Positions 11,699-61,775 of a stretch of DNA of 64,000 nt are shown here, piece by piece. Position numbers and translations under genes: made by a program. The notes under the pieces are model-generated. The model ran no database searches and was not told the origin of the DNA. It saw only the letters and a program-made list of their open reading frames with translations. The first letter of the stretch is position 1. Each line of letters starts with the position of its first letter. The stretch is taken from the IMG/VR virus record IMGVR_UViG_3300021142_000002, positions 62,001-126,000 of that record. One strand, given 5' to 3'.

Positions 11699-11734
11699 TA
11701 GATAGACTAGGGCTATATAGCCCTAGTCTATCTA
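11699..11734. repeat. 36-bp perfect palindrome
   Basis: TAGATAGACTAGGGCTAT|ATAGCCCTAGTCTATCTA directly after the Nudix stop. Confidence 0.85.
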
Positions 11735-12863: not shown

Positions 12864-14543
12864 ATGAATGAAAATAAATCTAGTATTAAAAGGGAATTTG
12901 TATTTGGTACTTACTGCCCTAATAGAGTAGATAGAAATAAAGATGCTGTTTTTGTTAAAGAGATTTTACATAAAGATGGTATGATAAAAAGAAACTTAAG
13001 GATGATAGAAAACTATCAAAGACCTTTTTATATTACTAAACCAAATTACAGAGATCATCAGCAAAAGAAAGAATTTGAACATTTAGCTAAATTAGATACT
13101 TACTATACGAATCAAGCTAATTTATCTAAAAGTATCTTTAAAGTACTCAACGGCTATAGACCTAATAATTATATTTCTATTCAGGATATGAATGAATCAC
13201 CTTATGTCTATGGCACTGATGTAGCTACACCAGTACTGATAGCTAATGATTATAAAACTAAATATCCAGATTTATTAACACCTTCAACACTGGCTGTGCT
13301 GGACTATGAAACTGATGTAGTCATGGGAAAAGAATATATCATTTCTGGTGTATTAGCTATGAAAGATAAACTACATATTGCTGTATCTAAAGAGTTTTTA
13401 GGTTACTTAGCTAAAGATGCTAAAGAACTGATTAAGCAAGCTTTAAATAAGTATCTATCTGAGTACATGGAAAAAAATAAGATAGAGCCTATTATTACTA
13501 TAGTGGATAAGCCCTCTGACGTAGTATTAGCTTTAATTAAATCAGCTCATACTTGGCAACCTGACTTTGTAGCTTGCTGGAATATTAAGTTTGATATGAA
13601 TAAAATGCTAGAAGCTTTAGCGATGGATGATATAGACCCTGCTTTTGCTTTTAGTGATCCATCAGTACCTCCTGAATATAGATTTTTTAGATGGCGAGAA
13701 GATAAGGATAAAAAATCAACAGCCAGTGGTAAAGTAACCCCTAAACATATAGCTGATAAATGGCATACAGCAACCTGCCCTGCTAGTTTTTATTTTATTT
13801 GCTTAATGGCAGTCCATAGAACAGTAAGGGCCAGAGATCCTTATAGATCTAGTTATAAATTAGATGCTGTATTAAAAGACTTTGGTGTGGGTGGGAAATT
13901 AAAGTTTGAAAATCTACAAGAAGGTTTAACAGAGTTAGATTGGCATAAGGAAATGCAAAGGATGTATAAGATAGAATACATGGTCTATATGGCATGGGAT
14001 GGTGGGTCAGCGATAGAGCTAGATCAAAAAACTAAGGATGCTAGTAACTCTGTTAGAGGAATGATTGGATTATCTGAATTAAGTAATATGAAAAGTAATC
14101 CAAAAAGACTATCAGATGACATGTACTTTGAACTATTAAAAGAAGATAAAGTATTAACGGGTACTAGCAACTGTATGCGTGATGAACTCGATGCTCTTAC
14201 ACCATCCCTTGTAAATTGGATAATAACTTTACCTTCTGAGTTAGAACATCACATGGGTAGAGCATTAATCAATGAATATCCAAAGATGCATACTAACATT
14301 ACTACCCATGCCTTTGACATTGACGTAGTATCGGCCTATCCTAAAACAGAAATAGCTTTAAATGTTTCTAAAACGACTAGAGCATTAGAATTATGTAAGA
14401 TTAGCGGATTAAGTGATAAACAGCAAAAGTCATTGGGCATTAATATGACTAATGTTAAAGTCAATGCCTTATCATTAGCTGAAAAAGCTTATAAGTTTCC
14501 TGATGTAGATGTTTTACTACAAGCTTTTATAAATCAAATGTAA
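12864..14543 (+). CDS. Split family-B DNA polymerase, exonuclease-containing subunit (phiKZ gp82-like)
   Basis: ExoI LDYETD, ExoII WNIKFD, ExoIII YMAWD, and motif A-like FDIDVVSAYP. Confidence 0.8.
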   Translation: MNENKSSIKREFVFGTYCPNRVDRNKDAVFVKEILHKDGMIKRNLRMIENYQRPFYITKPNYRDHQQKKEFEHLAKLDTYYTNQANLSKSIFKVLNGYRPNNYISIQDMNESPYVYGTDVATPVLIANDYKTKYPDLLTPSTLAVLDYETDVVMGKEYIISGVLAMKDKLHIAVSKEFLGYLAKDAKELIKQALNKYLSEYMEKNKIEPIITIVDKPSDVVLALIKSAHTWQPDFVACWNIKFDMNKMLEALAMDDIDPAFAFSDPSVPPEYRFFRWREDKDKKSTASGKVTPKHIADKWHTATCPASFYFICLMAVHRTVRARDPYRSSYKLDAVLKDFGVGGKLKFENLQEGLTELDWHKEMQRMYKIEYMVYMAWDGGSAIELDQKTKDASNSVRGMIGLSELSNMKSNPKRLSDDMYFELLKEDKVLTGTSNCMRDELDALTPSLVNWIITLPSELEHHMGRALINEYPKMHTNITTHAFDIDVVSAYPKTEIALNVSKTTRALELCKISGLSDKQQKSLGINMTNVKVNALSLAEKAYKFPDVDVLLQAFINQM

Positions 14544-14604: not shown

Positions 14605-15087
14605 TTATTCTTCTTTTTTAAACAAAGGGTCTAGTAACTCTACACAAGCTATTTGTAGAATTTCTTCAGTTGCTTCATAAGCATCCACTAATGATATCCT
14701 AGATAGAATGATATTGGCTATTAAGCTAAAGCATTCTCTAACACATTCAAACCATTCTTTATTAATACCGTTTAAACTGTACATATAAGCTACTACACCC
14801 TCTTTGTTAAAGAGATATTGTATTAGCCCTACCATTACATCGGTATTCATTTTATTGTCTTTAACAGCATTGTAGAGGTTTGTAATGTAATTAGTAATTA
14901 GATCATCACTAAAGCATTTATCAATAACTGTAGAGTTTTCTTTAGTTAATTGCAATAGTCTTTGAAATAACTCTTTTAAGTTAGTTTCTTCAATAGGCAT
15001 TCTGCAATTATAATCAGCTTTACTATTGGTATAGAAGACTGAAACAACGTAGTTTATTTTGTCAATTGCTAGTTCATTTAGTTTCAT
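14605..15087 (-). CDS. Hypothetical protein
   Basis: 160-aa ORF overlapping the upstream ORF by 4 nt. Confidence 0.6.
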   Translation of the reverse strand: MKLNELAIDKINYVVSVFYTNSKADYNCRMPIEETNLKELFQRLLQLTKENSTVIDKCFSDDLITNYITNLYNAVKDNKMNTDVMVGLIQYLFNKEGVVAYMYSLNGINKEWFECVRECFSLIANIILSRISLVDAYEATEEILQIACVELLDPLFKKEE

Positions 15088-15338
15088 AACTCATTAATTC
15101 CTGATAGTCTTCTAATGTTAATGTTGTTATTGAAAAGCATTTCTACTTCTTCATTGCTCGTACATCTATACCAATATAAATCATTCATTCCGGCATCACC
15201 GGTTACCGGATCATGCGTTATTCTTAAACCTTCCCACAAGACATGAGCTGTTGTACCATAGTCAGCTTTATCTTTTTCCCACTGTAATTTGTTCATATTT
15301 CCTCTAAATAAATAGTCATGTCTATGAAAGACATCCAT
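15084..15338 (-). CDS. Hypothetical protein
   Basis: 84-aa ORF. Confidence 0.5.
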   Translation of the reverse strand: MDVFHRHDYLFRGNMNKLQWEKDKADYGTTAHVLWEGLRITHDPVTGDAGMNDLYWYRCTSNEEVEMLFNNNINIRRLSGINEL

Positions 15339-15404
15339 TGGATAATGTAGTTATCAACATTTTTTGAATCTGTCCATACTATTTAAGTAATTAGGTACAA
15401 AAAA

Positions 15405-15840
15405 AAACTGAACATAAGTAGTACTACACTACCCAAACGAGTAGTGTAGTACTGATAGGCTAAGTGCTGATCACCGACGCCGCTGAGCCACTAATAATTA
15501 CATAGGTTATGAACCCCAGCTACTTTACTATAAAAGCGCTGGTGAATATATTGATTGCTGTTCGACATCAATGATTGAGGTTAATTTCATCGCCGAAATA
15601 TTTTGTTTAATGTCTCGTACTAGGAGAAAGAAATACTAACATTAAAACAAAGAATCAATATACTCATTTTTACTGGAGATTTCCACTATGGGTTAGACCG
15701 TAAACCATACAAAACGGAACATCATAATCTACTTTCTCAACAAACCATTTTCGCCAAATGTTCGCCAATAAAATGGTAGGCTAACTAAGAATGTTTCACT
15801 GGGATTCATATCCCATGCAACTACTAGTAGGTACTGCAAT
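15405..15840 (-). ncRNA. Candidate ~435-nt structured non-coding RNA
   Basis: Bounded by a consensus promoter (15842) and a hairpin plus T-tract (15405-15453); no ORF with an RBS; several helices. Confidence 0.4.
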
Positions 15841-15841
15841 A

Positions 15842-15871
15842 AGATAATGTATATTTCAAATTATCTTGAAT
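15842..15871 (-). promoter_or_regulatory. Early promoter (consensus)
   Basis: ATTCAA-N14-TACATTATCT. Confidence 0.65.
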
Positions 15872-15888
15872 TCACTCAAATAATAAAC

Positions 15889-16512
15889 TTACTGAATATT
15901 AAAAAATTTCTTTACTCGATTTAAAATAATTTCTGAAGTAGAAGAGACTAATGTACCTCTAATAGTTTCCCAGCTAATACTCTTAGCAGTAGCAAACCGA
16001 GACCCTTCATGTGCACAATCAACAAAGATCTTTACTAAAGAGAAAAACTCTCTTTGTTGTTCATTAGTGAGCATAGGCATTTTATCAACCGATGCAAACA
16101 TGTTTTCTGTCGTAAAGTGAGTGTTGAAGTTAGCATTAATGTATTTCAATAAATTTTGCATAAACTCAATAGCTTCTTCTTCTGAACCTTTAGATAAGAT
16201 TCTAGAGATACAGTTATAGAAAGTAGTTTGAGCTGCACCTACATCAGCAGGTGATCCTTGAGTAATACCTCTAAGCAGTGCAAAGGCTGATTCAAGGCGA
16301 GATGAGTTTAGAGCATCATTAGGGCACATATCTTTACCCAAAGTAGCAGGATGCACTGCATCTTCTACAACAGGGGCTACTTCTTTAGCGAGTGTATCAA
16401 AGACATTAACTACAGGTTCAGGTTGAGCAGGTACATTAGTTTCTGGCATAGCAGGGGCTATATCAGCAACCGCTGTAGTTTGTTCAGTAATAGTTTCTGT
16501 ACTATCGGACAT
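15889..16512 (-). CDS. Hypothetical protein
   Basis: 207-aa ORF; GAGG RBS; disordered N-terminus then a helical domain. Confidence 0.7.
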   Translation of the reverse strand: MSDSTETITEQTTAVADIAPAMPETNVPAQPEPVVNVFDTLAKEVAPVVEDAVHPATLGKDMCPNDALNSSRLESAFALLRGITQGSPADVGAAQTTFYNCISRILSKGSEEEAIEFMQNLLKYINANFNTHFTTENMFASVDKMPMLTNEQQREFFSLVKIFVDCAHEGSRFATAKSISWETIRGTLVSSTSEIILNRVKKFFNIQ

Positions 16513-16572: not shown

Positions 16573-17085
16573 TTATTTTGGTTTAATAGTGTAAAGTTTT
16601 AATTTCATAATTAATACATCGAGTACATTATGAAATTCTTGAATACCTCTGTTATTGTTAATAACAATATTGCAATCTGCCTGAGTAATGGTCATAGACT
16701 CTACATCTTCAGGTGGTAATCTTTCAGAAGCATCTACCCAGATAACTGTATCGACTAAACCAATCTTACGCATTTCTTTGAGCTCTTCAATGTTTCTTAA
16801 GCCACAGTAGATATTAGATTGACTAAAGATCAATTTACCCATTTTAGCTTTATCTTCTTCGTTATAGTCACAGATTAAATCATACCATTCTTTTCGATGA
16901 TTAACTCTATCGTTATAACACTCTTCTAAAGTCTGATAACCATATAACTCTTTTAGTTTAGGAAAGATATATTCTTCTGCTACTGCAAAACTAGAATTAG
17001 TAAATGTTAATCCAGTCTGTTCTTTAATATAGTCACAAGCAGTATCCTTGCCATGTCGTTTATGACCGGTTATAATTATATTCAT
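16573..17085 (-). CDS. Deoxynucleoside monophosphate kinase-like P-loop protein
   Basis: N-terminal ITGHKRHGKDT P-loop; GLRNIEE segment. Confidence 0.7.
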   Translation of the reverse strand: MNIIITGHKRHGKDTACDYIKEQTGLTFTNSSFAVAEEYIFPKLKELYGYQTLEECYNDRVNHRKEWYDLICDYNEEDKAKMGKLIFSQSNIYCGLRNIEELKEMRKIGLVDTVIWVDASERLPPEDVESMTITQADCNIVINNNRGIQEFHNVLDVLIMKLKLYTIKPK

Positions 17086-17141: not shown

Positions 17142-18419
17142 TTAGGTTAATCTATCAAGATAGTTATAACGATGGGTTGTTAAAGCTTGTGTATGAACTA
17201 GTGCTAAGAAGATAGAGGTAAAGGTAGAAGTAATAGAGGTCATCTGAGCATTGATACCAACTTCAGACGTTGATACAATATCGCCCATACATTTTTTACA
17301 AAAAGAGGTATGCTGAGTAATGCAGTAAGTAGGTGATCTAATGATAACATGTTTGCCAATATAATGCTTTAATTCACCTGGCTTAATAGGCTCTTCTTTA
17401 CCCAATAGGTATCTGCCGATATAGTTATCATAATTATCTGATTTAATAACTATAATCAAGCCTCTAGGCGTGTGGCAATCTTCATTATTAATATTATAAT
17501 TTTGAAAGATACGTCCAGTAATCTTTACTTCTACACCTGCTAAAGCGGTTGATTGACCTCTATTAAATGATCCACCTCGAATCATATTAGCAATAGCAGG
17601 TATCTCTTTAATACCCCAGCCTTCAGATAAAGAATTAGTCATGACTGATATCTTAGACTCATCAATAAAGTCTTGTTCAGCTCCAACCATAGCGTGCGTT
17701 CTTAAACGACTATTTAATGTTTTAGGTGAAATATAAAACCGCTCAGATGGATCACCTTTTAAATACTGTTTATCTAAATCCATTAACTGATTTTGAATAT
17801 CAGATACAACAGATGGGTCATGTAATTCATCTTTATGTTTTTCTAATAATTCTTTTTTTAGTTTTTCAGCTTCAGGGTTTAGAGTCAATGTTTTACGCGT
17901 AGCACAAGGTACCGATACCATAGATAAAACAGTAATCATACAGACGGCGTTTTCAAAACGATGATGCATAGCTGTCGTACATTCATCCTTTTGCAACACA
18001 TCATACGCTATTTTGTTTAATATCTTAGGTGTCATTTCATCATTAAAATAAGGCACTAATCCCTGATAAGGATACTCTATTAATAGAGCATTCATTAATA
18101 GTCTTCCATAGATAGTTTCTATATCTTCCTTAATACACTTTAAGGTATGAGCTTTTATTTGTATTTTTTCATAGCGATCATATAAAGGTTTATCGAACTC
18201 ATAATCAGTAATGATTTCTTTTTTGCCATTATCTAAATGCACAGTTAGATGATGTCCGTCCGTTACTATACCTGTTTCATGGGATATTTTATCATCATGA
18301 TTTTTCTCAGGTAAAATACCAAAACAAGACAGTAACCAAGCTCTTTCTAAATACCTTTCTGTTTTTAATGAATAAATCATGTATTCTAATTTAGTCATTT
18401 TTATTCTCCCTATAAGCAT
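17142..18419 (-). CDS. rpoC: Virion RNA polymerase beta' subunit, C-terminal part (phiKZ gp80-like; likely start 18398)
   Basis: EDCHTPRG...IRSPTYC...FCKKCMG zinc motif of beta'; LSEGW and RGQSTA segments. Confidence 0.8.
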   Translation of the reverse strand: MLIGRIKMTKLEYMIYSLKTERYLERAWLLSCFGILPEKNHDDKISHETGIVTDGHHLTVHLDNGKKEIITDYEFDKPLYDRYEKIQIKAHTLKCIKEDIETIYGRLLMNALLIEYPYQGLVPYFNDEMTPKILNKIAYDVLQKDECTTAMHHRFENAVCMITVLSMVSVPCATRKTLTLNPEAEKLKKELLEKHKDELHDPSVVSDIQNQLMDLDKQYLKGDPSERFYISPKTLNSRLRTHAMVGAEQDFIDESKISVMTNSLSEGWGIKEIPAIANMIRGGSFNRGQSTALAGVEVKITGRIFQNYNINNEDCHTPRGLIIVIKSDNYDNYIGRYLLGKEEPIKPGELKHYIGKHVIIRSPTYCITQHTSFCKKCMGDIVSTSEVGINAQMTSITSTFTSIFLALVHTQALTTHRYNYLDRLT

Positions 18420-23591: not shown

Positions 23592-23625
23592 GTACCATAC
23601 GGTAGCCTAGGCTACCGTATGGTAC
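23592..23625. repeat. 34-bp perfect palindrome
   Basis: GTACCATACGGTAGCCT|AGGCTACCGTATGGTAC between convergent ORFs. Confidence 0.85.
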
Positions 23626-37633: not shown

Positions 37634-37640
37634 TAAAACA

Positions 37641-37670
37641 CTCCTATAGAGCTCAATAGCTCTATAGGAG
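37641..37670. terminator. Hairpin terminator
   Basis: CTCCTATAGAGCT/AGCTCTATAGGAG. Confidence 0.65.
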
Positions 37671-37684
37671 TAATATTTAGTCTA

Positions 37685-42845: not shown

Positions 42846-42880
42846 TTGTTGCTCCGAAAAATTAGGGAAAGAAATAACAT

Positions 42881-42910
42881 ATACTGAGACTAATTAATTA
42901 GTCTCAGTAT
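42881..42910. repeat. 30-bp perfect palindrome
   Basis: ATACTGAGACTAATT|AATTAGTCTCAGTAT. Confidence 0.85.
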
Positions 42911-42922
42911 ATTAATTAAATT

Positions 42923-44605: not shown

Positions 44606-47087
44606 CGTATTGTTCAGATAGAGTCGTTAATTCTATCCCGTAGTGATTAACTACTGCTAATACTCTCGTATTAGACCAGATCATGTCTTTACCGATTAGT
44701 ATTTCTTTAAAATACTAATGAAGGTACCTCCCATTTCTTCCCACTTGGGTTCTACTCCGCATAACCGGATGATCGTTGAACTTTTTCCATATACAAATAC
44801 TGTACTTAGGAACTTAGCTGCATAGTTATCTCTATTTACTATATTTTCAAACTGTGGCATTATCTTTCGATAATACAGTAGTATAGTAACTTAACAAGAT
44901 GTTCTAGCAATTAAAGAGGGTTCTATCTTAATATTTCTATTAAGTAGGGCATTTGCATACCATCATACGTATTGTTCAGATAGAATCGTTAATTCTATCC
45001 CGCAGCTTTACCTGCATCGCTAACACTTTCATGTTAGACCAGACTATATCTTCTACTAACTAGATTTAATTAGTAGCCCACCACTTCGAGATTACTTAAT
45101 CTCTACACCACGCAACCGGTTAGTCGTTGAACTTTACTCATATGCTCAGTAGAGCACTTAGAGTCTTAGCTGCTGATTGCCCAATCTTTATTATTTTTAA
45201 ACATTCATATTTCTTTTCAAAAATACAGTAGTTAATAAAGCTCTAAGGGGTTTCCAGCAATTCAATGGGATTCTTTATAACCTTACGACTATAAAGGACT
45301 CTAATTTCACTTATACTTAATTTAAATACCATCATAAAAAAGATGCTAGATAAAATAGGAATTATATAAGCATTTGATATCTGCATTGCATCCACGCAGC
45401 ACTAGAGTAGAAAAACTGATTGTTTTATCCTTTAAATCATTTTTTACTTTAGTTATATAAAAACATTGTGCAGATAGTCTTCCAAGACTAGGCATATATC
45501 TTTAAATAAGGTCGTTAATCTTATTTCTACTAATGTAGCTCTTACTCTCGTAAGATGTTGAGACTATATCATTACCTTTTACTTACTTTGTAAGTAAGCA
45601 TTCAGGCACACACCACTTCGAGATTACTTAATCTCTACTCTACTCGATTCAATTTATTCAATCGTCTTTCGATAGTCGTTGAACGTTCTCCTTATCTCGA
45701 TAATAGACTTAGGAGCTTCGCTGCTGATTGACTCTATTTACTATTTTTCAAACTATGGTATTATCTTTCAATAATACAGTAGTATAGTAACCTAACGAGT
45801 GATTCCAGCAATTAGATGTGTTTAATCAACAATATTTCTATTGAGGGGAACCCAATAACTTATGGTTATATGAAATAATAGTTTACAGAAATAAATCTGA
45901 TGATATTAAACTATAAATTATTTATATAAATTCCGTTGAAATAAAACCATAATCCCTCTGCATGGTAAAGGCGTTATTTCAAATTTTGTAACTCGTTTTA
46001 TTTCTGGCCCTTCATTAATTAGTTCTTGTATAATTTCGTCTATTAACTTATTATACATATTGCCACTATTTTCAACTAAATCATAGGCTCTTTTAGAACT
46101 AAAATTTCGCTGCATTAATTTAGAAACAATATGAACCTTTAACATCTCTAGACCCTGGGCCCAGGGTACATGTATTTCACTATATGAATGAGGTACATTT
46201 AAAGATGTGATCACCGCCCGCATACAAAAGTGTGATCTAGAACAATATAACTGTCCTCTAAACCATCCCTTCTTTAAACAGAATGTACCCTTAATCGTTG
46301 CAACATGATAAGCTACTAGATTAGCTATAACAGAGACTACTTTAGTTTCTATCTGGTTATCCGTTAATGGCTTAGACCTAGGCATGCTAATGTTAGCGAT
46401 TGTTCTACAAGCATCAATAGCGCCTGTAATAGATCGTTTATCTGCCCATGCGCCTGTTTGGGTATTTTCTACAATTAACATAGCCTTGGTAGGCACGGGT
46501 AAATACTTTGGAAATATTTTATTTCTAATGGCTTTAAGAAAGTAACAATAATCCAAAGCTTTATTCTTAGTTAATATAGGCAATATCTCTAAGAATTTAT
46601 CAAAGTTTCTAATAAAGTAATTTAATCCTCGCTCCCAACCTATGGATTCTAAATACTTTATTTTCTTTTGTGACTCTTTTGTTAAGTTACTAGGTACTTT
46701 AGCTCTGGAGTTTGTTAAATACTCCATGATGGAATAAGAGCCTCCTAGATGAGTATTTAACTGTACCCAGACTTCAGGTACAATAAATCCATCTATTCCA
46801 TCCGGTACTCTTATCCATGTTCGCATATCTATATTGCCTTCAGCAGGATAAGTAACAGGGGTATTGCAATTATCACAATACTTGTTTTCTTTAAATCCAT
46901 ACTTAGTATGCCCACAAGCGCAAGTAGGTACAGAGCCCAATACATCTGATTCATAAGTCGTTAGAATTAATGAATTAAAGGCAGCTCTATCTTCCTCTGT
47001 TTGATAAGGCACATCATTTAATACAACTGGTTTGACTACCTTAGTAAAAACAGTATCAAAGTCCGGTATATCAATGTAGTTTGACAA
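44438..47087 (-). CDS. rpoC: nvRNAP beta' catalytic subunit (phiKZ gp55-like), 4 exons, 482 aa spliced: join(47087-45930, 45492-45379, 44967-44959, 44605-44438)
   Basis: Zn motif CACG..CDNC in exon 1; the spliced junctions rebuild FQRN|PSL and GCNAD|YDG|DEMN; all phase 0; TTG start with GGAG RBS. Confidence 0.88.
44606..44958 (-). ncRNA. Group I intron 3 (353 nt, ORF-less, IA-like)
   Basis: 5' exon ends in U with P1 GGU/AU-GCAA-AU/GCC; P AAUUGCUAGAA; R GUUCAACGAUCA; S GACAUGAUCU; GAGA-capped P9; terminal G. Confidence 0.85.
44959..44967 (-). CDS. nvRNAP beta' exon 3: 9-nt microexon TAT GAT GGT (YDG)
   Basis: Preceded by the omega-G of intron 2, ends in U, and supplies the middle Asp of the catalytic DxDGD. 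Confidence 0.8.
44968..45378 (-). ncRNA. Group I intron 2 (411 nt, ORF-less, IA-like)
   Basis: P AAUUGCUGGAA; Q AAUCAGCAGC; R GUUCAACGACUA (45121-45132); S GAUAUAGUCU (45041-45050); GAAA-capped P9; terminal G. Confidence 0.85.
45379..45492 (-). CDS. nvRNAP beta' exon 2 (38 aa)
   Basis: PSLGRLSAQCFYITKVKNDLKDKTISFSTLVLRGCNAD. Confidence 0.85.
45493..45929 (-). ncRNA. Group I intron 1 (437 nt, ORF-less, IA-like)
   Basis: P AAUUGCUGGAA; Q AAUCAGCAGC; R GUUCAACGACUA (45673-45684); S GAUAUAGUCU (45561-45570); 5' exon ends in U; terminal G. Confidence 0.85.
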
Positions 47088-47771: not shown

Positions 47772-49757
47772 TTATCTTTGGTTCCAAGTAGAAGCCAAAG
47801 GTGATGTTGTTCCATAGTGCTGTGGATTATAACCTGGTTGGTTATAATTTCTTTGGTAGTAAGAAGAAACACCATGACCTTGCAGCGGAGTAATGTACTC
47901 GCTATTAAATGATTGACGTTGTACCATAGAAGACATATCAGATAGACCTTCAATAGTTACAGCAATGCCGCATTGTGCGTGCATTTCTTCAATAGTATTG
48001 ATGAAATCATTATTGAAGAAGAACCGTGAAATCAATCCAGTCACTGTAAAGTTAGGCGCCATTTGTTTACGGATATTACGTTTGATATCCATGTCTTCTA
48101 AAGAGTTATTGCCTGGATAGAAACCTAAGGCAAATGAATCAAAGAATGTCATGTCGCCTGCTGAATAACTTAAGCAGGTCAGATAATCAATAGTTCGACC
48201 ATCACGTGCTCTACCATTTGTATCAGTGTAATAACCGGCATGTAAATCCACACGCAGCGTAGAATTAGTAGCACGATCGTATTGCATGATAGGTTTATTC
48301 TTTGGCAGCCATAATTTGCTGAATACACCGCCTGAATAAGCATCCAATTCATTAATAATAATAGATTCTTCTTTAGAACCCGGTACAGCACCTGCAAACA
48401 AAGTTTGTAACCATTCAGTTGGACTGCCTTTAATGATATCCATAGCGACCAGCACAGTACGAGTGCAATACATAGCTGCCATCGCTTGAGCAGTTACTTT
48501 ATCTTCACCCACCATAGGGTCAGAGCCGCTAACAACAGTTAGTTCTTTAGGAACAAATTGTTTTTGTGGCATTGGCAATGGATCATGTTCAAGACCTAAG
48601 ATACCTAAGTTAGGTTTCAACTGATTATCACCTACAAAAGGTTCAAAGATAGTAGCCCATTTATTTTGGGTAGGGTCTAGTAATGGTAATAATGATGGCA
48701 GCGCTAATAGCTGAGTCAACAAATTATCATTAGACCGACTAGATGCACCTAAAGATGAAGTGTTTGTAATCACAAACACTGGATCATAGCCTGGAGTAGG
48801 TACTGGGTAACCAGTATAAGGTGCTTGCTGAGTAGGTACTCTGCGGTAGAAATCCATATAGCCCGCAATAGCCGTTAATGCAATTTCATCTTGTTGATTA
48901 CTAATAGCACGAACATCAGTGCTAATTGGTTTACCTGCTTGGCGTGCATAAAGGACCACGTTAACATCGGCGACATAAGGCTGATTAACAGATGATAAAT
49001 AAATGCCGCCTGGAGTGACATCAAACTTAGATACCAACTGTACAGTATTGTTAGCCAATACATTAACAGTGACTGGCGAGGTTGGTAAGTTTTGTTTGCT
49101 GCGCATAGTAGCGCTGATGGCAGCCAAGGCATGGTCATAGAACTTAGCGAGTGAATTAATATTCAACAACTCAACCGTTTTTGGCACCACCATGTTAGAT
49201 GCACAAACACTGCCATTTGATTTACCCGATACATTGCCAATAACATTTTCAACGATTTCTCGAGTTTGTTTGTTCCAGAATAGAGCTGGAAACATGTCAA
49301 TTTCAACCGAGCGATTATTTCTACCAATGTTTGCATGCTTATTAGCTAGTGGGCGAGCCATTTCTTCAAACATTAATGTACTATAGTACACTAAGTTTGT
49401 TCTGCTACATTTAAACCAAAGTGCAACAATCGCAATTGGAATGCGTGGATCTTCAACTGGAAGGACTTTAACTTGTAGAATGGTTGGATTATTTTCAACC
49501 CGTTTTTGCACATCCGCCAATGCTTTCAGCAATTCAGTAGTATTACCTGAACCTACATTGCCAGATGCAGTAACTGAAGATAAACCCATTAAGGCATCAA
49601 AACCGACTGTAGCTGCTGAACCTGCATTGCCACTTACATAGGCTGATGCTTGAGATTCAAACGTATCATTAGTTTTGTGCTGTTGCTGATTGCCACGACC
49701 TGTGGTTAGAATTACTTCATCTTCCTCAAAGCCTGGGCGATTAGTAGTATTATTCAT
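47772..49757 (-). CDS. chmA: Chimallin, phage nuclear shell protein
   Basis: 661 aa; position upstream of the gp55-like beta'; C-terminal segments (HAGYY..GRARDGRTIDYL; FTVTGLISRFFFNNDFINTIEEM..CGIAVTIEG) parallel the recalled ChmA sequence; disordered termini. Confidence 0.85.
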   Translation of the reverse strand: MNNTTNRPGFEEDEVILTTGRGNQQQHKTNDTFESQASAYVSGNAGSAATVGFDALMGLSSVTASGNVGSGNTTELLKALADVQKRVENNPTILQVKVLPVEDPRIPIAIVALWFKCSRTNLVYYSTLMFEEMARPLANKHANIGRNNRSVEIDMFPALFWNKQTREIVENVIGNVSGKSNGSVCASNMVVPKTVELLNINSLAKFYDHALAAISATMRSKQNLPTSPVTVNVLANNTVQLVSKFDVTPGGIYLSSVNQPYVADVNVVLYARQAGKPISTDVRAISNQQDEIALTAIAGYMDFYRRVPTQQAPYTGYPVPTPGYDPVFVITNTSSLGASSRSNDNLLTQLLALPSLLPLLDPTQNKWATIFEPFVGDNQLKPNLGILGLEHDPLPMPQKQFVPKELTVVSGSDPMVGEDKVTAQAMAAMYCTRTVLVAMDIIKGSPTEWLQTLFAGAVPGSKEESIIINELDAYSGGVFSKLWLPKNKPIMQYDRATNSTLRVDLHAGYYTDTNGRARDGRTIDYLTCLSYSAGDMTFFDSFALGFYPGNNSLEDMDIKRNIRKQMAPNFTVTGLISRFFFNNDFINTIEEMHAQCGIAVTIEGLSDMSSMVQRQSFNSEYITPLQGHGVSSYYQRNYNQPGYNPQHYGTTSPLASTWNQR

Positions 49758-52453: not shown

Positions 52454-52487
52454 TGTGGATACTAGGGAGTACTCCCTAGTATCCACA
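52454..52487. repeat. 34-bp perfect palindrome
   Basis: TGTGGATACTAGGGAGT|ACTCCCTAGTATCCACA. Confidence 0.85.
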
Positions 52488-54345: not shown

Positions 54346-54389
54346 CTTTATTTTCCCCTAATATTACTATTGATATTAATACATCTAAT

Positions 54390-54419
54390 AGATAATATAT
54401 AAATAACTATATATTGATT
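54390..54419 (-). promoter_or_regulatory. Early promoter
   Basis: AATCAA-N14-TATATTATCT. Confidence 0.6.
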
Positions 54420-54547
54420 AATATTAGTATTATTAATATCTACTATAAATACTAGTATTAAAGATTACTAGTATTATTAAATGAATAATAGAAACTATAC
54501 GTTTCTATTATGCTATATATTTACGTACCTATTATTACCTAAATGAG

Positions 54548-54573
54548 GATTAATACACTTAAGTGTATTAATC
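54548..54573. repeat. 26-bp perfect palindrome
   Basis: GATTAATACACTT|AAGTGTATTAATC. Confidence 0.8.
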
Positions 54574-54753
54574 ACTATTAGTATACATTAAAGAAGTATT
54601 ATTTATATACGTTAATGTAGTAGTCTATTATATACGCTAAGGAAGGTTGTTTATATATTGTTTTTACCCCCACTCCAGACCACGATTCCATCAACCCCTC
54701 GCAACCAGATTTCTCTAGTCGCGGGTAATGTATTAGTTATTCACTAAGACATA

Positions 54754-54840
54754 CTATACTGGTAATAGTAATATAAAAATAAAGAAAAAAAAAAGAATAA
54801 GTAATACAGTGCCAATAACCAAATAAATTAATTCAGTCAT
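54754..54840 (-). CDS. Hydrophobic peptide (28 aa, not in ORF track)
   Basis: MTELIYLVIGTVLLILFFFFIFILLLPV; GGAG RBS; promoter-like motif upstream. Confidence 0.6.
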   Translation of the reverse strand: MTELIYLVIGTVLLILFFFFIFILLLPV

Positions 54841-54907
54841 TTTAATCTCCTGCCCTTATAGGGACTTAAATGTTATAGTTAAATGGATTACTGGTGTAAT
54901 TCCAATT

Positions 54908-54937
54908 AAATGGTATATACATGAAAATAATTTGAAT
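54908..54937 (-). promoter_or_regulatory. Early-promoter-like motif
   Basis: ATTCAA-N14-TATACCATTT. Confidence 0.5.
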
Positions 54938-54982
54938 CCATTCTTACCGTATGTATAGCAGTCTACTAATAGAGGATAATCA

Positions 54983-56370: not shown

Positions 56371-56402
56371 ATAGAGTAGAGTGCCTAGGCACTCTACTCT
56401 AT
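56371..56402. repeat. 32-bp perfect palindrome
   Basis: ATAGAGTAGAGTGCCT|AGGCACTCTACTCTAT. Confidence 0.85.
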
Positions 56403-58606: not shown

Positions 58607-58638
58607 GGAGTAGGGATAGCCTAGGCTATCCCTACTCC
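58607..58638. repeat. 32-bp perfect palindrome
   Basis: GGAGTAGGGATAGCCT|AGGCTATCCCTACTCC. Confidence 0.85.
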
Positions 58639-61719: not shown

Positions 61720-61749
61720 AGATAATATATTTATTAAAAATAGTAGAAT
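61720..61749 (-). promoter_or_regulatory. Early promoter
   Basis: ATTCTA-N14-TATATTATCT. Confidence 0.6.
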
Positions 61750-61775
61750 AGAGCATTAATGCTCTATTCTACTAT
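61740..61775. repeat. 36-bp perfect palindrome
   Basis: ATAGTAGAATAGAGCATT|AATGCTCTATTCTACTAT. Confidence 0.85.

What the first reader, a model, noticed from the sequence alone, without database searches (positions are those of the whole stretch)
15405..15871. Candidate ~435-nt structured non-coding RNA with its own consensus promoter and terminator
A perfect-consensus promoter (15842-15871) faces 435 nt with no RBS-bearing ORF, ending in a 13-bp hairpin plus T9. Visible helices include UGGGAU/AUCCCA (15800-15815), ACCAUUUU/AAAAUGGU enclosing a TTCGCCAA tandem (15744-15777), and a 13-bp long-range helix GAGUAUAUUGAUU/AAUCAAUAUAUUC (~15653-15665 with ~15544-15556). TTAGCCTA occurs near both ends. 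It matches no tRNA, tmRNA, RNase P or intron signature I can recognise.
Basis: partly seen in the sequence, partly recalled or inferred. Interest (0 to 1): 0.62.

Follow-up and report, generated by a model that had tools for sequence, protein, structure and literature searches.

The report
Orphan structured RNA gene, jumbo phage
An uncultured freshwater nucleus-forming jumbo phage carries a ~440-base stretch with its own phage-type early promoter and terminator, no gene for a protein and an unusually stable fold, so it is most likely a new non-coding RNA of unknown function, though no RNA data or covariation yet prove it.

Summary
The window lies in a 220-kb chimallin-encoding jumbo phage from lake metagenomes. 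On the minus strand, 15837 to about 15399 is an ORF-less unit. It starts behind a copy of the phage's own early-promoter motif (AATTCAA..ATACATTATCT..G), which is not a sigma-70 consensus. It ends at a 15-bp hairpin, a 12-nt spacer and T9, the phage's usual gene-end signal.

The RNA folds at -139.6 kcal/mol (z -7.6; -5.9 without the terminator), against -101.9 (z -3.0) for the opposite strand. A 32-bp long-range helix encloses about 280 nt. It is the best long-range inverted repeat in the genome, and all six transition mismatches are G.U on the transcribed strand.

No Rfam family, tRNA or tmRNA matches. No open frame has an RBS, coding-like codon usage or a family hit.

Four relatives (46-53% RNAP-beta identity) carry ORF-less, early-promoter-driven units, three of them at the same gene position. 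Three of the four have 26-39-bp long-range helices. The unit bodies share no detectable sequence similarity.

One exposed loop is the exact complement of the phage's commonest RBS.

There are no RNA-seq data and no relatives close enough for covariation. Verdict: probably a real orphan structured RNA; its function is inferred only.

The parts
15866..15872 (-). Upstream promoter element AATTCAA (-35-like)
   Evidence: Aligned with the promoters of the units in L009, L004, L006 and L024, and with the chimallin and next-gene promoters. Columns A15, T16, C18 and A20 are invariant.
15842..15852 (-). Core of the phage early-promoter motif, ATACATTATCT (-10-like)
   Evidence: PWM score 25.7. There are 21 intergenic copies, all on the strand of the downstream gene. 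The motif type matches what is described for early promoters of jumbo phages read by the virion RNA polymerase (PMC7598289).
15837..15837 (-). Predicted transcription start (invariant G)
   Evidence: Invariant G, five bases after the motif, in alignment A3. The placement is inferred from the rule that the motif is centred near -10. It has not been mapped.
15798..15831 (-). 5' arm of the long-range closing helix
   Evidence: Pairs with 15520-15488 in 17+13 bp plus 2 bp, pairing probability about 1.0. The strand-neutral scan gives 25 Watson-Crick pairs, 6 G.U, 0 A.C and 1 other. It is the best long-range helix in the genome.
15744..15777 (-). Hairpin ACCAUUU/AAAUGGU enclosing two UUGGCGAA copies
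   Evidence: Pairing probability 0.96. The sequence is shown.
15543..15666 (-). Inner domain closed by a 14-bp helix (15666-15653/15556-15543), holding two hairpins
   Evidence: Pairing probability 0.97. The helix has one G.U and no A.C.
15602..15651 (-). Extended hairpin (7+6+5 bp) with the 10-nt apical loop UCUUUCUCCU at 15631-15622
   Evidence: The loop is unpaired with probability 1.00. It contains UUUCUCCUA, the only antisense copy in the genome of the RBS 9-mer UAGGAGAAA, which occurs 19 times as an RBS.
15488..15520 (-). 3' arm of the long-range closing helix
15777..15784 (-). First UUAGCCUA copy
   Evidence: It is a half-site of the AGCCTAGGCT palindrome at the centre of many terminator hairpins.
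15456..15463 (-). Second UUAGCCUA copy, inside a small G+C-rich 3' hairpin (15481-15458)
15420..15453 (-). Terminator hairpin: 15-bp stem, GUUU loop
   Evidence: pairing probability 0.99.
15399..15419 (-). Spacer ACUUAUGUUCAG, then T9; likely 3' end region
   Evidence: The hairpin + (A/C/T)TATG(TT) + T-run layout recurs at many gene ends. The run is T10 in some lake samples and in L014.
15340..15369 (-). Weaker second promoter (ATTCAAA..ACATTATCC) for the next gene, whose likely start is the ATG at 15296
   Evidence: PWM score 17.6, alignment A3. An RBS, AGAGGAAAT, precedes the second ATG.

Best explanation
The region is a stand-alone gene for a structured non-coding RNA of about 438 nt, from 15837 to about 15400 on the minus strand, in a nucleus-forming (chimallin-encoding) jumbo phage.

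SHOWN BY SEQUENCE
- It begins behind a full copy of the phage's early-promoter motif. Its nearest match in the genome is the chimallin promoter.
- It ends at the phage's standard gene-end hairpin.
- It holds no credible ORF.
- It folds into a strand-specific structure dominated by a 32-bp helix. That helix pairs bases about 8-39 with bases about 319-350 and encloses a branched core of about 280 nt.

INFERRED
- The virion RNA polymerase transcribes it immediately after infection.
- The long duplex is long enough to be an RNase III-type substrate. It ties the ends together and either serves as a processing stem or protects a stable core.
- The RNA acts in trans through exposed loops.

The one concrete candidate for how it acts is the 10-nt apical loop UCUUUCUCCU. 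It is the exact complement of the phage's commonest ribosome-binding site, UAGGAGAAA. That site is enriched at the first genes of early operons. The RNA could therefore pair with those Shine-Dalgarno regions and damp or time early-gene translation.
For: CONTEXT
- Chimallin, split RNA polymerase subunits and DNA polymerase are present.
- The record is a 220-kb virus contig from freshwater metagenomes.

PROMOTER
- The motif has 21 intergenic copies, all on the coding strand. Only this copy has no start codon within 150 nt.
- BLAST of the region against its own genome pairs it with the chimallin promoter.

GENE END
- The terminator belongs to the phage's hairpin family.

FOLD
- -139.6 kcal/mol, z -7.6.
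- Body alone, z -5.9.
- Antisense strand, -101.9 kcal/mol, z -3.0.
- Lowest energy of 401 genome windows sampled.

CLOSING HELIX
- Top long-range inverted repeat in 220 kb.
- Six G.U and no A.C. Over the long helices of all five units the count is 21 G.U to 3 A.C, p = 0.0035 after allowing for base composition.

NOT CODING
- No RBS-bearing ORF.
- The open frames give no Pfam match and only one weak PHROG match (E 0.3).
- The 48-codon plus-strand frame scores -0.17 per codon, below every true coding window tested.

RELATIVES
- ORF-less, promoter-led units follow the p207 homologue in L009, L004/L005 and L006. L024 has one displaced by two genes.
- Their z-scores are -4.0, -8.1 and -10.5.
- In each locus the only helices scoring 20 or more with spans of 257-301 nt lie inside these units.

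ANTI-RBS LOOP
-.
- The exact RBS 9-mer follows 7 of 21 early promoters against 12 of 192 other genes, p = 0.0008.
- L004's unit carries loops complementary to its own commonest RBS, AAUAGGAA.
Against: - No expression data. No listed public run holding the sequence is on record as RNA.
- No covariation. Lake samples and contig L014 carry the same sequence apart from T9/T10. The nearest relatives are only 40-53% identical in RNAP beta.
- The unit bodies share no detectable sequence similarity, so homology between them is not shown.
- Five related loci have no such unit after the p207 homologue: L011, L021, L022, L023 and L012, whose gap there is only 260 nt. The element is therefore dispensable.
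- The U-run is 12 nt from the hairpin, so termination efficiency is unknown.
- After correction for G+C content the stability is only 3.1 sd from the genome trend, and two other sampled windows come close.
- The anti-RBS signal is absent from L006, L024 and L009, and it was noticed post hoc.
- The phage encodes no RNase III of its own, so any processing would depend on an unknown host.
Confidence: 0.55

Rival explanations
1. The region is a long structured 5' leader that ends in a conditional terminator. Most transcripts stop at the hairpin and some read through into the 70-aa and 160-aa genes downstream. The RNA would then be a by-product or a cis-regulator, like the 5'UTR-derived short RNAs mapped in phiKZ.
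For: - In phiKZ, 17 candidate ncRNAs arise by premature termination inside 5'UTRs, and two were confirmed by Northern blot (PMC10914365).
- In L024 the structured modules run straight into the RBS of a 130-aa gene, with no terminator or promoter between.
- In L004 a terminator is followed by an ORF with no new promoter.
- Here the U-run lies 12 nt from the hairpin, which may weaken termination.
Against: - The next gene has its own promoter copy, PWM score 17.6, at the usual distance from its ATG.
- L006 also has a separate promoter after its unit.
- The downstream genes differ between phages and show no homology.
- No ligand- or protein-sensing family matches.
- No convincing anti-terminator pairing was seen by eye.
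Confidence: 0.2
2. The element works at the DNA level and not as a functional RNA. It could be a transcription-activated replication origin or single-strand initiation site. It could also be a small non-autonomous mobile element, with the 26-39-bp 'helices' being terminal inverted repeats.
For: - Long, near-perfect inverted repeats 257-343 nt apart: 27/27 matches in L024, 25/26 in L006.
- Patchy presence among relatives, and a shifted position in L024.
- The location is among replication genes: DNA polymerase, dNMP kinase and RNAP.
- The unit bodies are unrelated in sequence.
Against: - It is single-copy in the genome.
- The arms share no sequence between phages, and no target-site duplication is visible at the helix ends.
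- Mismatches are almost all G.U on the transcribed strand (21 to 3). Random decay of DNA repeats does not predict that. A single-stranded DNA form of the same strand would also tolerate G.T.
- A dedicated promoter and a terminator bracket the unit, and a terminator argues against an R-loop primer.
- The cumulative GC skew shows no turn at this position.
Confidence: 0.1
3. The region is a decayed or very small protein gene: either the 48-codon plus-strand frame behind the perfect RBS TAGGAGAAA, which has ATA where a start codon should be, or a short minus-strand peptide. The apparent structure would be incidental.
For: - On the plus strand, TAGGAGAAAGAAATA has exactly the RBS-to-start spacing of real genes and opens a 48-codon frame at 15633-15776.
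- Table 11 lists ATA as a possible start codon.
Against: - Codon-usage score is -0.17 per codon, below every true coding window and typical of non-coding frames.
- The 48-codon plus-strand frame has no Pfam or PHROG match even at E = 1; among the six frames tested the only match is a weak PHROG one (E 0.3) for a 35-aa minus-strand frame.
- No phage promoter motif lies on the plus strand here.
- About 1.5 frames of this length are expected by chance in this A+T-rich stretch (own estimate).
- It explains neither the promoter and terminator on the minus strand nor the strand-specific fold.
Confidence: 0.05

Closest known systems
phiKZ 5'UTR-derived and intergenic ncRNA candidates (ONT-cappable-seq, Grad-seq; PMC10914365)
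   Same: - Same virus family.
- A short ORF-less transcript bounded by a phage promoter and a terminator upstream of a gene.
- Function unknown.
   Different: - Those RNAs are 71-196 nt; this one is about 438 nt.
- This one has a 32-bp long-range helix, and the next gene has a second promoter.
- No sequence relation could be tested. Expression here is not shown.
GOLLD and ROOL large ornate RNAs (Rfam RF01998, RF03087)
   Same: - Large (hundreds of nt), ORF-less, highly structured RNAs of phages and prophages, often next to tRNA genes.
- GOLLD was first seen in lake metagenomes.
- The relative L004 has a tRNA-Leu right beside its unit.
   Different: - No match to either model, even at E = 10 on a 2.4-kb search. 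Nor in L004 and L006 at E 0.1, or in the L006 and L024 unit regions at E 5.
- No conserved sequence core was found among the units.
phi29 prohead (packaging) RNA
   Same: - A phage-encoded stable RNA made from an early promoter.
- Its 5' and 3' ends pair in a long helix.
- Sequence is poorly conserved among relatives while structure is kept (own knowledge).
   Different: - pRNA is 120-174 nt and belongs to a small podovirus with protein-primed DNA.
- Nothing here links the RNA to packaging.
RNase III processing stems (rRNA precursors; phage T7 early RNA)
   Same: A long-range duplex of about 30 bp, formed by sequences flanking a functional core (own knowledge).
   Different: - Cleavage is untested and the host is unknown.
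- The phage has no RNase III gene.
Group I introns
   Same: Similar size (about 300 nt), and the same genome holds three of them in an RNAP-beta gene.
   Different: - No Intron_gpI match at E = 10, while the true introns score 54-91 bits.
- The unit has its own promoter and terminator, and no flanking exons.
T4 RegB-type shut-off of early mRNAs at their Shine-Dalgarno sequence
   Same: If the anti-RBS loop is functional, both would silence early messages through the GGAG ribosome-binding site (own knowledge of RegB).
   Different: RegB is a protein nuclease. Here an RNA loop would act by pairing. This is entirely hypothetical.

Membership tests
Sigma-70 consensus promoter | TTGACA, 16-18 nt spacer, TATAAT | tested here: not met
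   The scan finds no minus-strand site at 15842-15871. Read by eye, the best reading gives about 3/6 and 2/6 matches.
Jumbo-phage early (virion RNAP) promoter | A phage-specific, roughly 10-nt A+T-rich motif, highly conserved, repeated upstream of early operons and centred near -10 | tested here: met
   ATACATTATCT is an exact match. There are 21 intergenic copies on the coding strand, including the one upstream of chimallin. The definition comes from PMC7598289. Timing and the polymerase involved are inferred.
Intrinsic terminator | G+C-rich hairpin followed immediately by a U-run | tested here: inconclusive
   The 15-bp hairpin is present and the scan lists it. The T9 run starts 12 nt after the stem. 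The same layout recurs at many gene ends of this phage.
Any Rfam 15 family (including GOLLD, ROOL, 6S, RNase P, tmRNA, riboswitches, ribozymes) | Covariance-model score at or near the gathering threshold | tested here: not met
   The best hits overlapping the unit score 16-21 bits against gathering thresholds of 50-84.
tRNA / tmRNA | Cloverleaf detected by ARAGORN | tested here: not met
   None in the window or in the whole genome.
Group I intron | Conserved P3-P8 catalytic core; sits inside a gene | tested here: not met
   No Intron_gpI hit at E = 10. The same model finds three introns at 44657-45867. The unit lies between complete genes.
Conserved structured RNA family (covariation-supported) | Compensatory base changes in helices across homologues | not testable with these tools
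   Only identical or 99.8%-identical copies were found. The relatives' units cannot be aligned.
Miniature inverted-repeat mobile element | Terminal inverted repeats | tested here: met
   32-bp arms.
Miniature inverted-repeat mobile element | Multiple copies, shared repeat sequence, target-site duplication | tested here: not met
   Single copy in the genome. The arms are unrelated between phages. No duplication is visible at the helix ends.
Small protein gene | Start codon with RBS, coding-like codon usage, homologues | tested here: not met

The most novel reading that the evidence does not exclude
This clade of freshwater chimalliviruses keeps a slot, next to a conserved gene, for early-expressed RNA genes. 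The slot holds a tRNA in one phage and long-stem structured RNAs in others.

The RNA in this phage would be an 'anti-Shine-Dalgarno' regulator. Its exposed loop pairs with the UAGGAGAAA ribosome-binding sites of the first genes of early operons, and so times or shuts off early protein synthesis. The loop would co-evolve with each phage's own RBS: UUUCUCCUA here, UUUUCCUAUU in L004.

Alternatively, the long duplexes could act as decoys for host RNA-sensing defences.
Probability: 0.15. Interest if true: 0.8.

Novelty: new variant of a known kind. Interest (0 to 1): 0.55.

Why it matters
Nucleus-forming jumbo phages separate transcription from translation and run their own polymerases, yet almost nothing is known about regulatory RNAs in them. 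phiKZ has only short, uncharacterised candidates.

A 440-nt RNA with its own promoter, expressed early and strongly structured, would be one of the largest candidate ncRNAs in this virus family. Analogues in related phages, three of them at the same gene position, add weight. It would also be a concrete handle on how early gene expression is timed, or how host RNA-directed functions are countered.

The work also yields the phage's promoter and terminator rules, which make the rest of this uncultured genome readable.

The value is limited for now. The host is unknown, the phage is uncultured, and neither expression nor covariation can be shown.

Tried and rejected
SEARCHES FOR RELATIVES OR KNOWN FAMILIES
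- blastn of the region against 50,697 phage records found no match.
- tblastn of the upstream 207-aa protein against phages found no match.
- The word search for that protein found only itself.
- The search for related loci with that protein found nothing in viral contigs. With RNAP beta it found one distant locus, L003, with no synteny.
- The promoter pattern scan found nothing in viral contigs. In metagenome contigs it found only the phage itself, a 99.8%-identical strain, and chance hits in coding DNA.
- Rfam at permissive thresholds found nothing credible: on the region, on the whole loci L004, L006 and L007 (which found only the L004 tRNA), and on the L006 and L024 unit regions. At gathering threshold L009, L012 and the window gave no hit in any unit. 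L009 was never scanned permissively.

READS
- No listed run that holds the stretch is on record as RNA.
- Laying contigs of four lake runs (1,701 letters, under the 6,000 limit) showed no variants except T9/T10.

COMPARING THE UNITS
- Pairwise and semi-global alignments of the unit bodies against shuffles gave local z no higher than 1.6; semi-global z reached 2.9 and 2.3 for two pairs (L009-L004, L006-L024). These were not taken as homology.
- blastn with word size 7 found only promoter similarity.
- L004 and L005 differ only by one copy of a 13-nt repeat, so they give no substitutions to test.

THE 207-AA NEIGHBOUR
- The AlphaFold model (mean pLDDT 79) has no PDB match.
- It resembles uncharacterised and 'virion structural' proteins of other chimalliviruses.
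- It therefore gives no clue that it is a partner protein or an origin-binding protein.

OTHER
- No RNase III family member is encoded in the phage.
- A self-BLAST for inverted repeats was too insensitive. It was replaced by a strand-neutral diagonal scan.
- Three folding scripts timed out; one search had already printed results for 13 of its 27 regions. They were replaced by a smaller genome scan.
- The idea that the AATTCAA..TTGAA palindrome is an operator specific to this RNA was dropped, because the chimallin and next-gene promoters share the element.
- No covariance model of the full RNA was built. It would exceed 400 columns, and only sequences already held could have been searched.
Full report
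CONTEXT

The window is bases 62001-126000 of a 220,366-bp virus record. G+C content is about 32%. The sequence is found nearly identical in many freshwater metagenome runs.

It encodes a chimallin-family nuclear shell protein (47772-49757), split multisubunit RNA polymerase pieces (17142-18419 and 45918-47087), a DNA polymerase (12864-14543) and a dNMP kinase (16573-17085). It is therefore a nucleus-forming, phiKZ-like jumbo phage. It is only about 33% identical in RNAP beta to any cultured phage.

CHECK OF THE OBSERVATION

On the minus strand a 550-nt gap separates the 207-aa ORF (15889-16512) from an 84-aa ORF (15084-15338). The real start of the 84-aa ORF is probably the RBS-preceded ATG at 15296.

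Three points needed correction.

1. The promoter is not a sigma-70 consensus.
 - The sigma-70 scan finds nothing there on the minus strand.
 - BLAST of the gap against the phage's own genome matched the region upstream of chimallin. That led to a genome-wide motif, ATACATTATCT, then 4 nt, then G.
 - The motif has 21 intergenic copies. All lie on the strand of the gene that follows, 10-82 nt before a start codon with an AGGAG-type RBS. The two exceptions are chimallin (148 nt) and this copy (512 nt, with a terminator in between).
 - This matches the published description of jumbo-phage early promoters: a phage-specific, A+T-rich, roughly 10-nt motif centred near -10 and read by the virion RNA polymerase (PMC7598289). 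phiKZ's shell gene also has an early promoter (PMC8244752).
 - An upstream AATTCAA element is shared with the chimallin promoter and with the units of four related phages.
 - By that rule the start is the invariant G at 15837. This is an inference.

2. The terminal hairpin has 15 bp, and a 12-nt spacer containing TATG separates it from T9. About 15 other gene ends in this genome use the same design: a perfect 13-16-bp hairpin, often centred on CCTAGG, then (A/C/T)TATG(TT), then a T-run.

THE FOLD

- The 440-nt RNA folds at -139.6 kcal/mol, z = -7.6 against dinucleotide shuffles.
- Without the terminator, z = -5.9.
- The opposite strand gives -101.9 kcal/mol, z = -3.0.

A helix of 17+13 (+2) bp pairs 15831-15798 with 15520-15488, with pairing probability about 1.0. 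It encloses about 280 nt. Inside are the ACCAUUU/AAAUGGU hairpin, a 14-bp helix (15666-15653/15556-15543) and several hairpins. The local UGGGAU/AUCCCA hairpin competes with this helix and loses.

Three controls were run.
- Among 400 other windows of 440 nt sampled across the genome on both strands, none folds better. The minimum is -139.1 kcal/mol. After correction for G+C content the unit lies 3.1 sd below the trend.
- In a strand-neutral scan of all inverted repeats within 700 nt, this helix scores 18.9. It is the best long-range pair (span over 100 nt) in 220 kb. The next scores 15.9 and lies in coding DNA. All other high scorers are local terminator hairpins.
- The six transition mismatches in the helix are all G.U on the transcribed strand. 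None is A.C. Over the long helices of this unit and four related units the count is 21 to 3, p = 0.0035 against the composition-adjusted expectation. This asymmetry points to selection on the RNA, or at least on that single strand, and not on duplex DNA.

NOT CODING, NOT A KNOWN RNA

- No start-codon ORF exceeds 36 aa and none has an RBS.
- The stop-to-stop frames (up to 51 codons) have no Pfam match and only one weak PHROG match (E 0.3), even at E = 1.
- One frame needed care. On the plus strand a perfect RBS, TAGGAGAAA, is followed at the normal spacing by ATA and 47 open codons. Its codon-usage score, -0.17 per codon, is below every true coding window tested (mean +0.33) and is typical of non-coding frames.
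- Rfam 15 at E = 10 gives only noise.
- ARAGORN finds no tRNA or tmRNA in the window or the genome.
- The same Rfam run finds three group I introns elsewhere in the window. The group I model therefore works on this phage and does not match this unit.

RELATIVES

There are no close relatives.
- Four lake runs and contig L014 (99.8% identical) add only a T9/T10 length difference.
- The word search with RNAP beta found a star-like clade at 40-53% identity. I fetched ten of its contigs.

Gene order is conserved: RNAP beta, dNMP kinase, a homologue of the 207-aa protein, and a DNA polymerase on the other strand.

Directly after the 207-aa homologue:
- L009 (nearest relative, same promoter GATACATTATCTAATAGCA) has an ORF-less unit of about 450 nt ending in a hairpin, z = -4.0.
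- L004/L005 have a tRNA-Leu(UAA) with its own promoter. A 447-nt ORF-less unit follows, z = -8.1.
- L006 has an ORF-less unit of about 790 nt, z = -10.5.
- L024 has a 650-nt unit two genes further on, acting as the leader of a 130-aa gene.
- L011, L021, L022 and L023 have none, and L012 has only a 260-nt gap there.

The unit bodies share no detectable sequence similarity; only the promoters align.

They do share an architecture. Long-range helices of 26-39 bp span 257-343 nt:
- target: 32 bp, span 343
- L004: 39 bp, span 299
- L006: 26 bp, span 260
- L024: 27 bp, span 257, and 28 bp, span 301
- L009: none

In each 13-21-kb locus, the only long-range helices scoring 20 or more lie inside these units.

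This is evidence for a recurring kind of element in this genomic neighbourhood. It is not proof of common descent, and it is not covariation.

HOW IT MIGHT WORK

Shown:
- a promoter of the chimallin type
- an ORF-less body
- a strand-specific fold with a 32-bp closing duplex
- a standard gene end

Inferred:
- very early transcription by the virion polymerase
- a closing duplex long enough (more than two helical turns) to be an RNase III-type substrate, or a clamp that protects both ends
- action in trans

One specific lead exists.
- The 10-nt apical loop UCUUUCUCCU (15631-15622) is unpaired with probability 1.0. It contains UUUCUCCUA.
- Its complement, UAGGAGAAA, occurs 19 times on the minus strand, all as ribosome-binding sites. 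It occurs only once on the plus strand, at this position.
- Seven of the 19 copies follow early promoters directly: 7 of 21 such genes against 12 of 192 others, p = 0.0008.
- Only 0.8% of same-strand windows hold an equally good anti-RBS word.
- L004's unit carries UUUUCCUAUUU in an 11-nt loop, plus a second UUCCUAU. Both are complementary to that phage's commonest RBS, AAUAGGAA; the background rate there is 6%.
- L006, L024 and L009 show nothing comparable.

I treat RBS pairing as a testable hypothesis, not a finding.

RIVALS

- Leader with a conditional terminator. phiKZ makes 17 short RNAs in this way (PMC10914365), and L024 and L004 look leader-like. Here and in L006, however, the next gene has its own promoter.
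- DNA-level element, either a replication origin or a small mobile element. Near-perfect inverted repeats, patchy distribution and the replication-gene neighbourhood fit. Single copy, unrelated arms, no visible target duplication, the G.U bias and the bracketing promoter and terminator do not.
- Small or decayed protein gene. Rejected on codon usage, absence of homologues and absence of an RBS.

THE NEIGHBOURING 207-AA PROTEIN

It has a disordered N-terminus and a confident all-alpha C-terminal domain (mean pLDDT 79). It has no PDB match. It resembles uncharacterised and 'virion structural' proteins of other chimalliviruses. It also occurs in relatives that lack the RNA unit. Nothing links it to the RNA.

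COMPARISON WITH KNOWN SYSTEMS

- The nearest known things by kind are the phiKZ ncRNA candidates. They are in the same virus family and have the same promoter-to-terminator layout, but they are much shorter.
- Next are the large phage-associated RNAs GOLLD and ROOL. They are similar in size and in keeping company with tRNAs, but their models do not match.
- phi29 pRNA is a precedent for an early phage RNA whose ends pair and whose sequence drifts while the structure stays.

The unit fails every family membership test that could be run. I therefore file it as a new orphan class within the known kind 'phage-encoded structured ncRNA'.

VERDICT

The promoter type and the hairpin details needed correcting, and the main helix had been overlooked. 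Function, expression and evolutionary conservation of the fold remain open.

Noticed in passing
window 44657-44966, 45020-45316, 45539-45867 (minus strand): Three ORF-less group I introns in tandem (Rfam 54-91 bits) fill the 1.5-kb 'gap' after ORF 45918-47087. That ORF matches only positions 1-380 of a 478-position RNA polymerase beta profile. The polymerase gene is therefore apparently split into four exons. An intron in an RNAP gene is known from PhiPA3.
   Followed up: partly
window 11699-11734, 23592-23625, 37640-37671, 42879-42912, 52454-52487, 56371-56402, 58607-58638, 61740-61775, and elsewhere in the genome: Gene ends use perfect 14-16-bp palindromic hairpins. Many are centred on (A)GCCTAGGC(T): 17 of the genome's 25 CCTAGG sites sit at hairpin centres. 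An (A/C/T)TATG(TT) word and a T-run often follow, on both strands at convergent junctions. TATG is the phiKZ late-promoter core, so these may be combined terminator and late-promoter signals.
   Followed up: partly
window 15348, 32772, 37612, 44417, 49905, 52410, 54398, 58580 (minus strand; first A of ACATTATC or variant): These are further copies of the early-promoter motif, each 10-148 nt upstream of a start codon. One of them serves chimallin (49905). Together they give a ready-made map of early operons.
   Followed up: yes
L004 12807-12891 (and L005): A related phage carries a tRNA-Leu(UAA) with its own early promoter exactly where this phage has the ncRNA promoter. The window's phage has no tRNA gene in 220 kb.
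   Followed up: partly
window 15889-16512; L023 17004-18278: The 207-aa protein upstream is conserved across the clade (25-38% identity to the window's protein, C-terminus ..LKKFFNI). It has a disordered N-terminus and an all-alpha domain. It resembles uncharacterised and virion proteins of other chimalliviruses, and in L023 it is fused to the dNMP kinase.
   Followed up: partly
window 54346-54982: A 637-nt gap between divergent genes also folds well (z about -5.3 on the minus strand and -4.2 on the plus strand). It was not examined further. Sampled 440-nt windows starting at genome positions 138800 and 158600 (outside the window) fold nearly as well as the target.
   Followed up: no
L009 5855-6310: The nearest relative's unit has a strong Shine-Dalgarno sequence followed by AUG-UAA (a start-stop pair) near its 5' end. 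It lacks a strong long-range helix.
   Followed up: no
window 15399-15407; L004 vs L005 around 12975: There are length polymorphisms inside the units. The T-run is T9 or T10 in lake samples. L004 and L005 differ by one copy of a 13-nt repeat (AAATATTAATATT) in the 5' part of their unit.
   Followed up: yes
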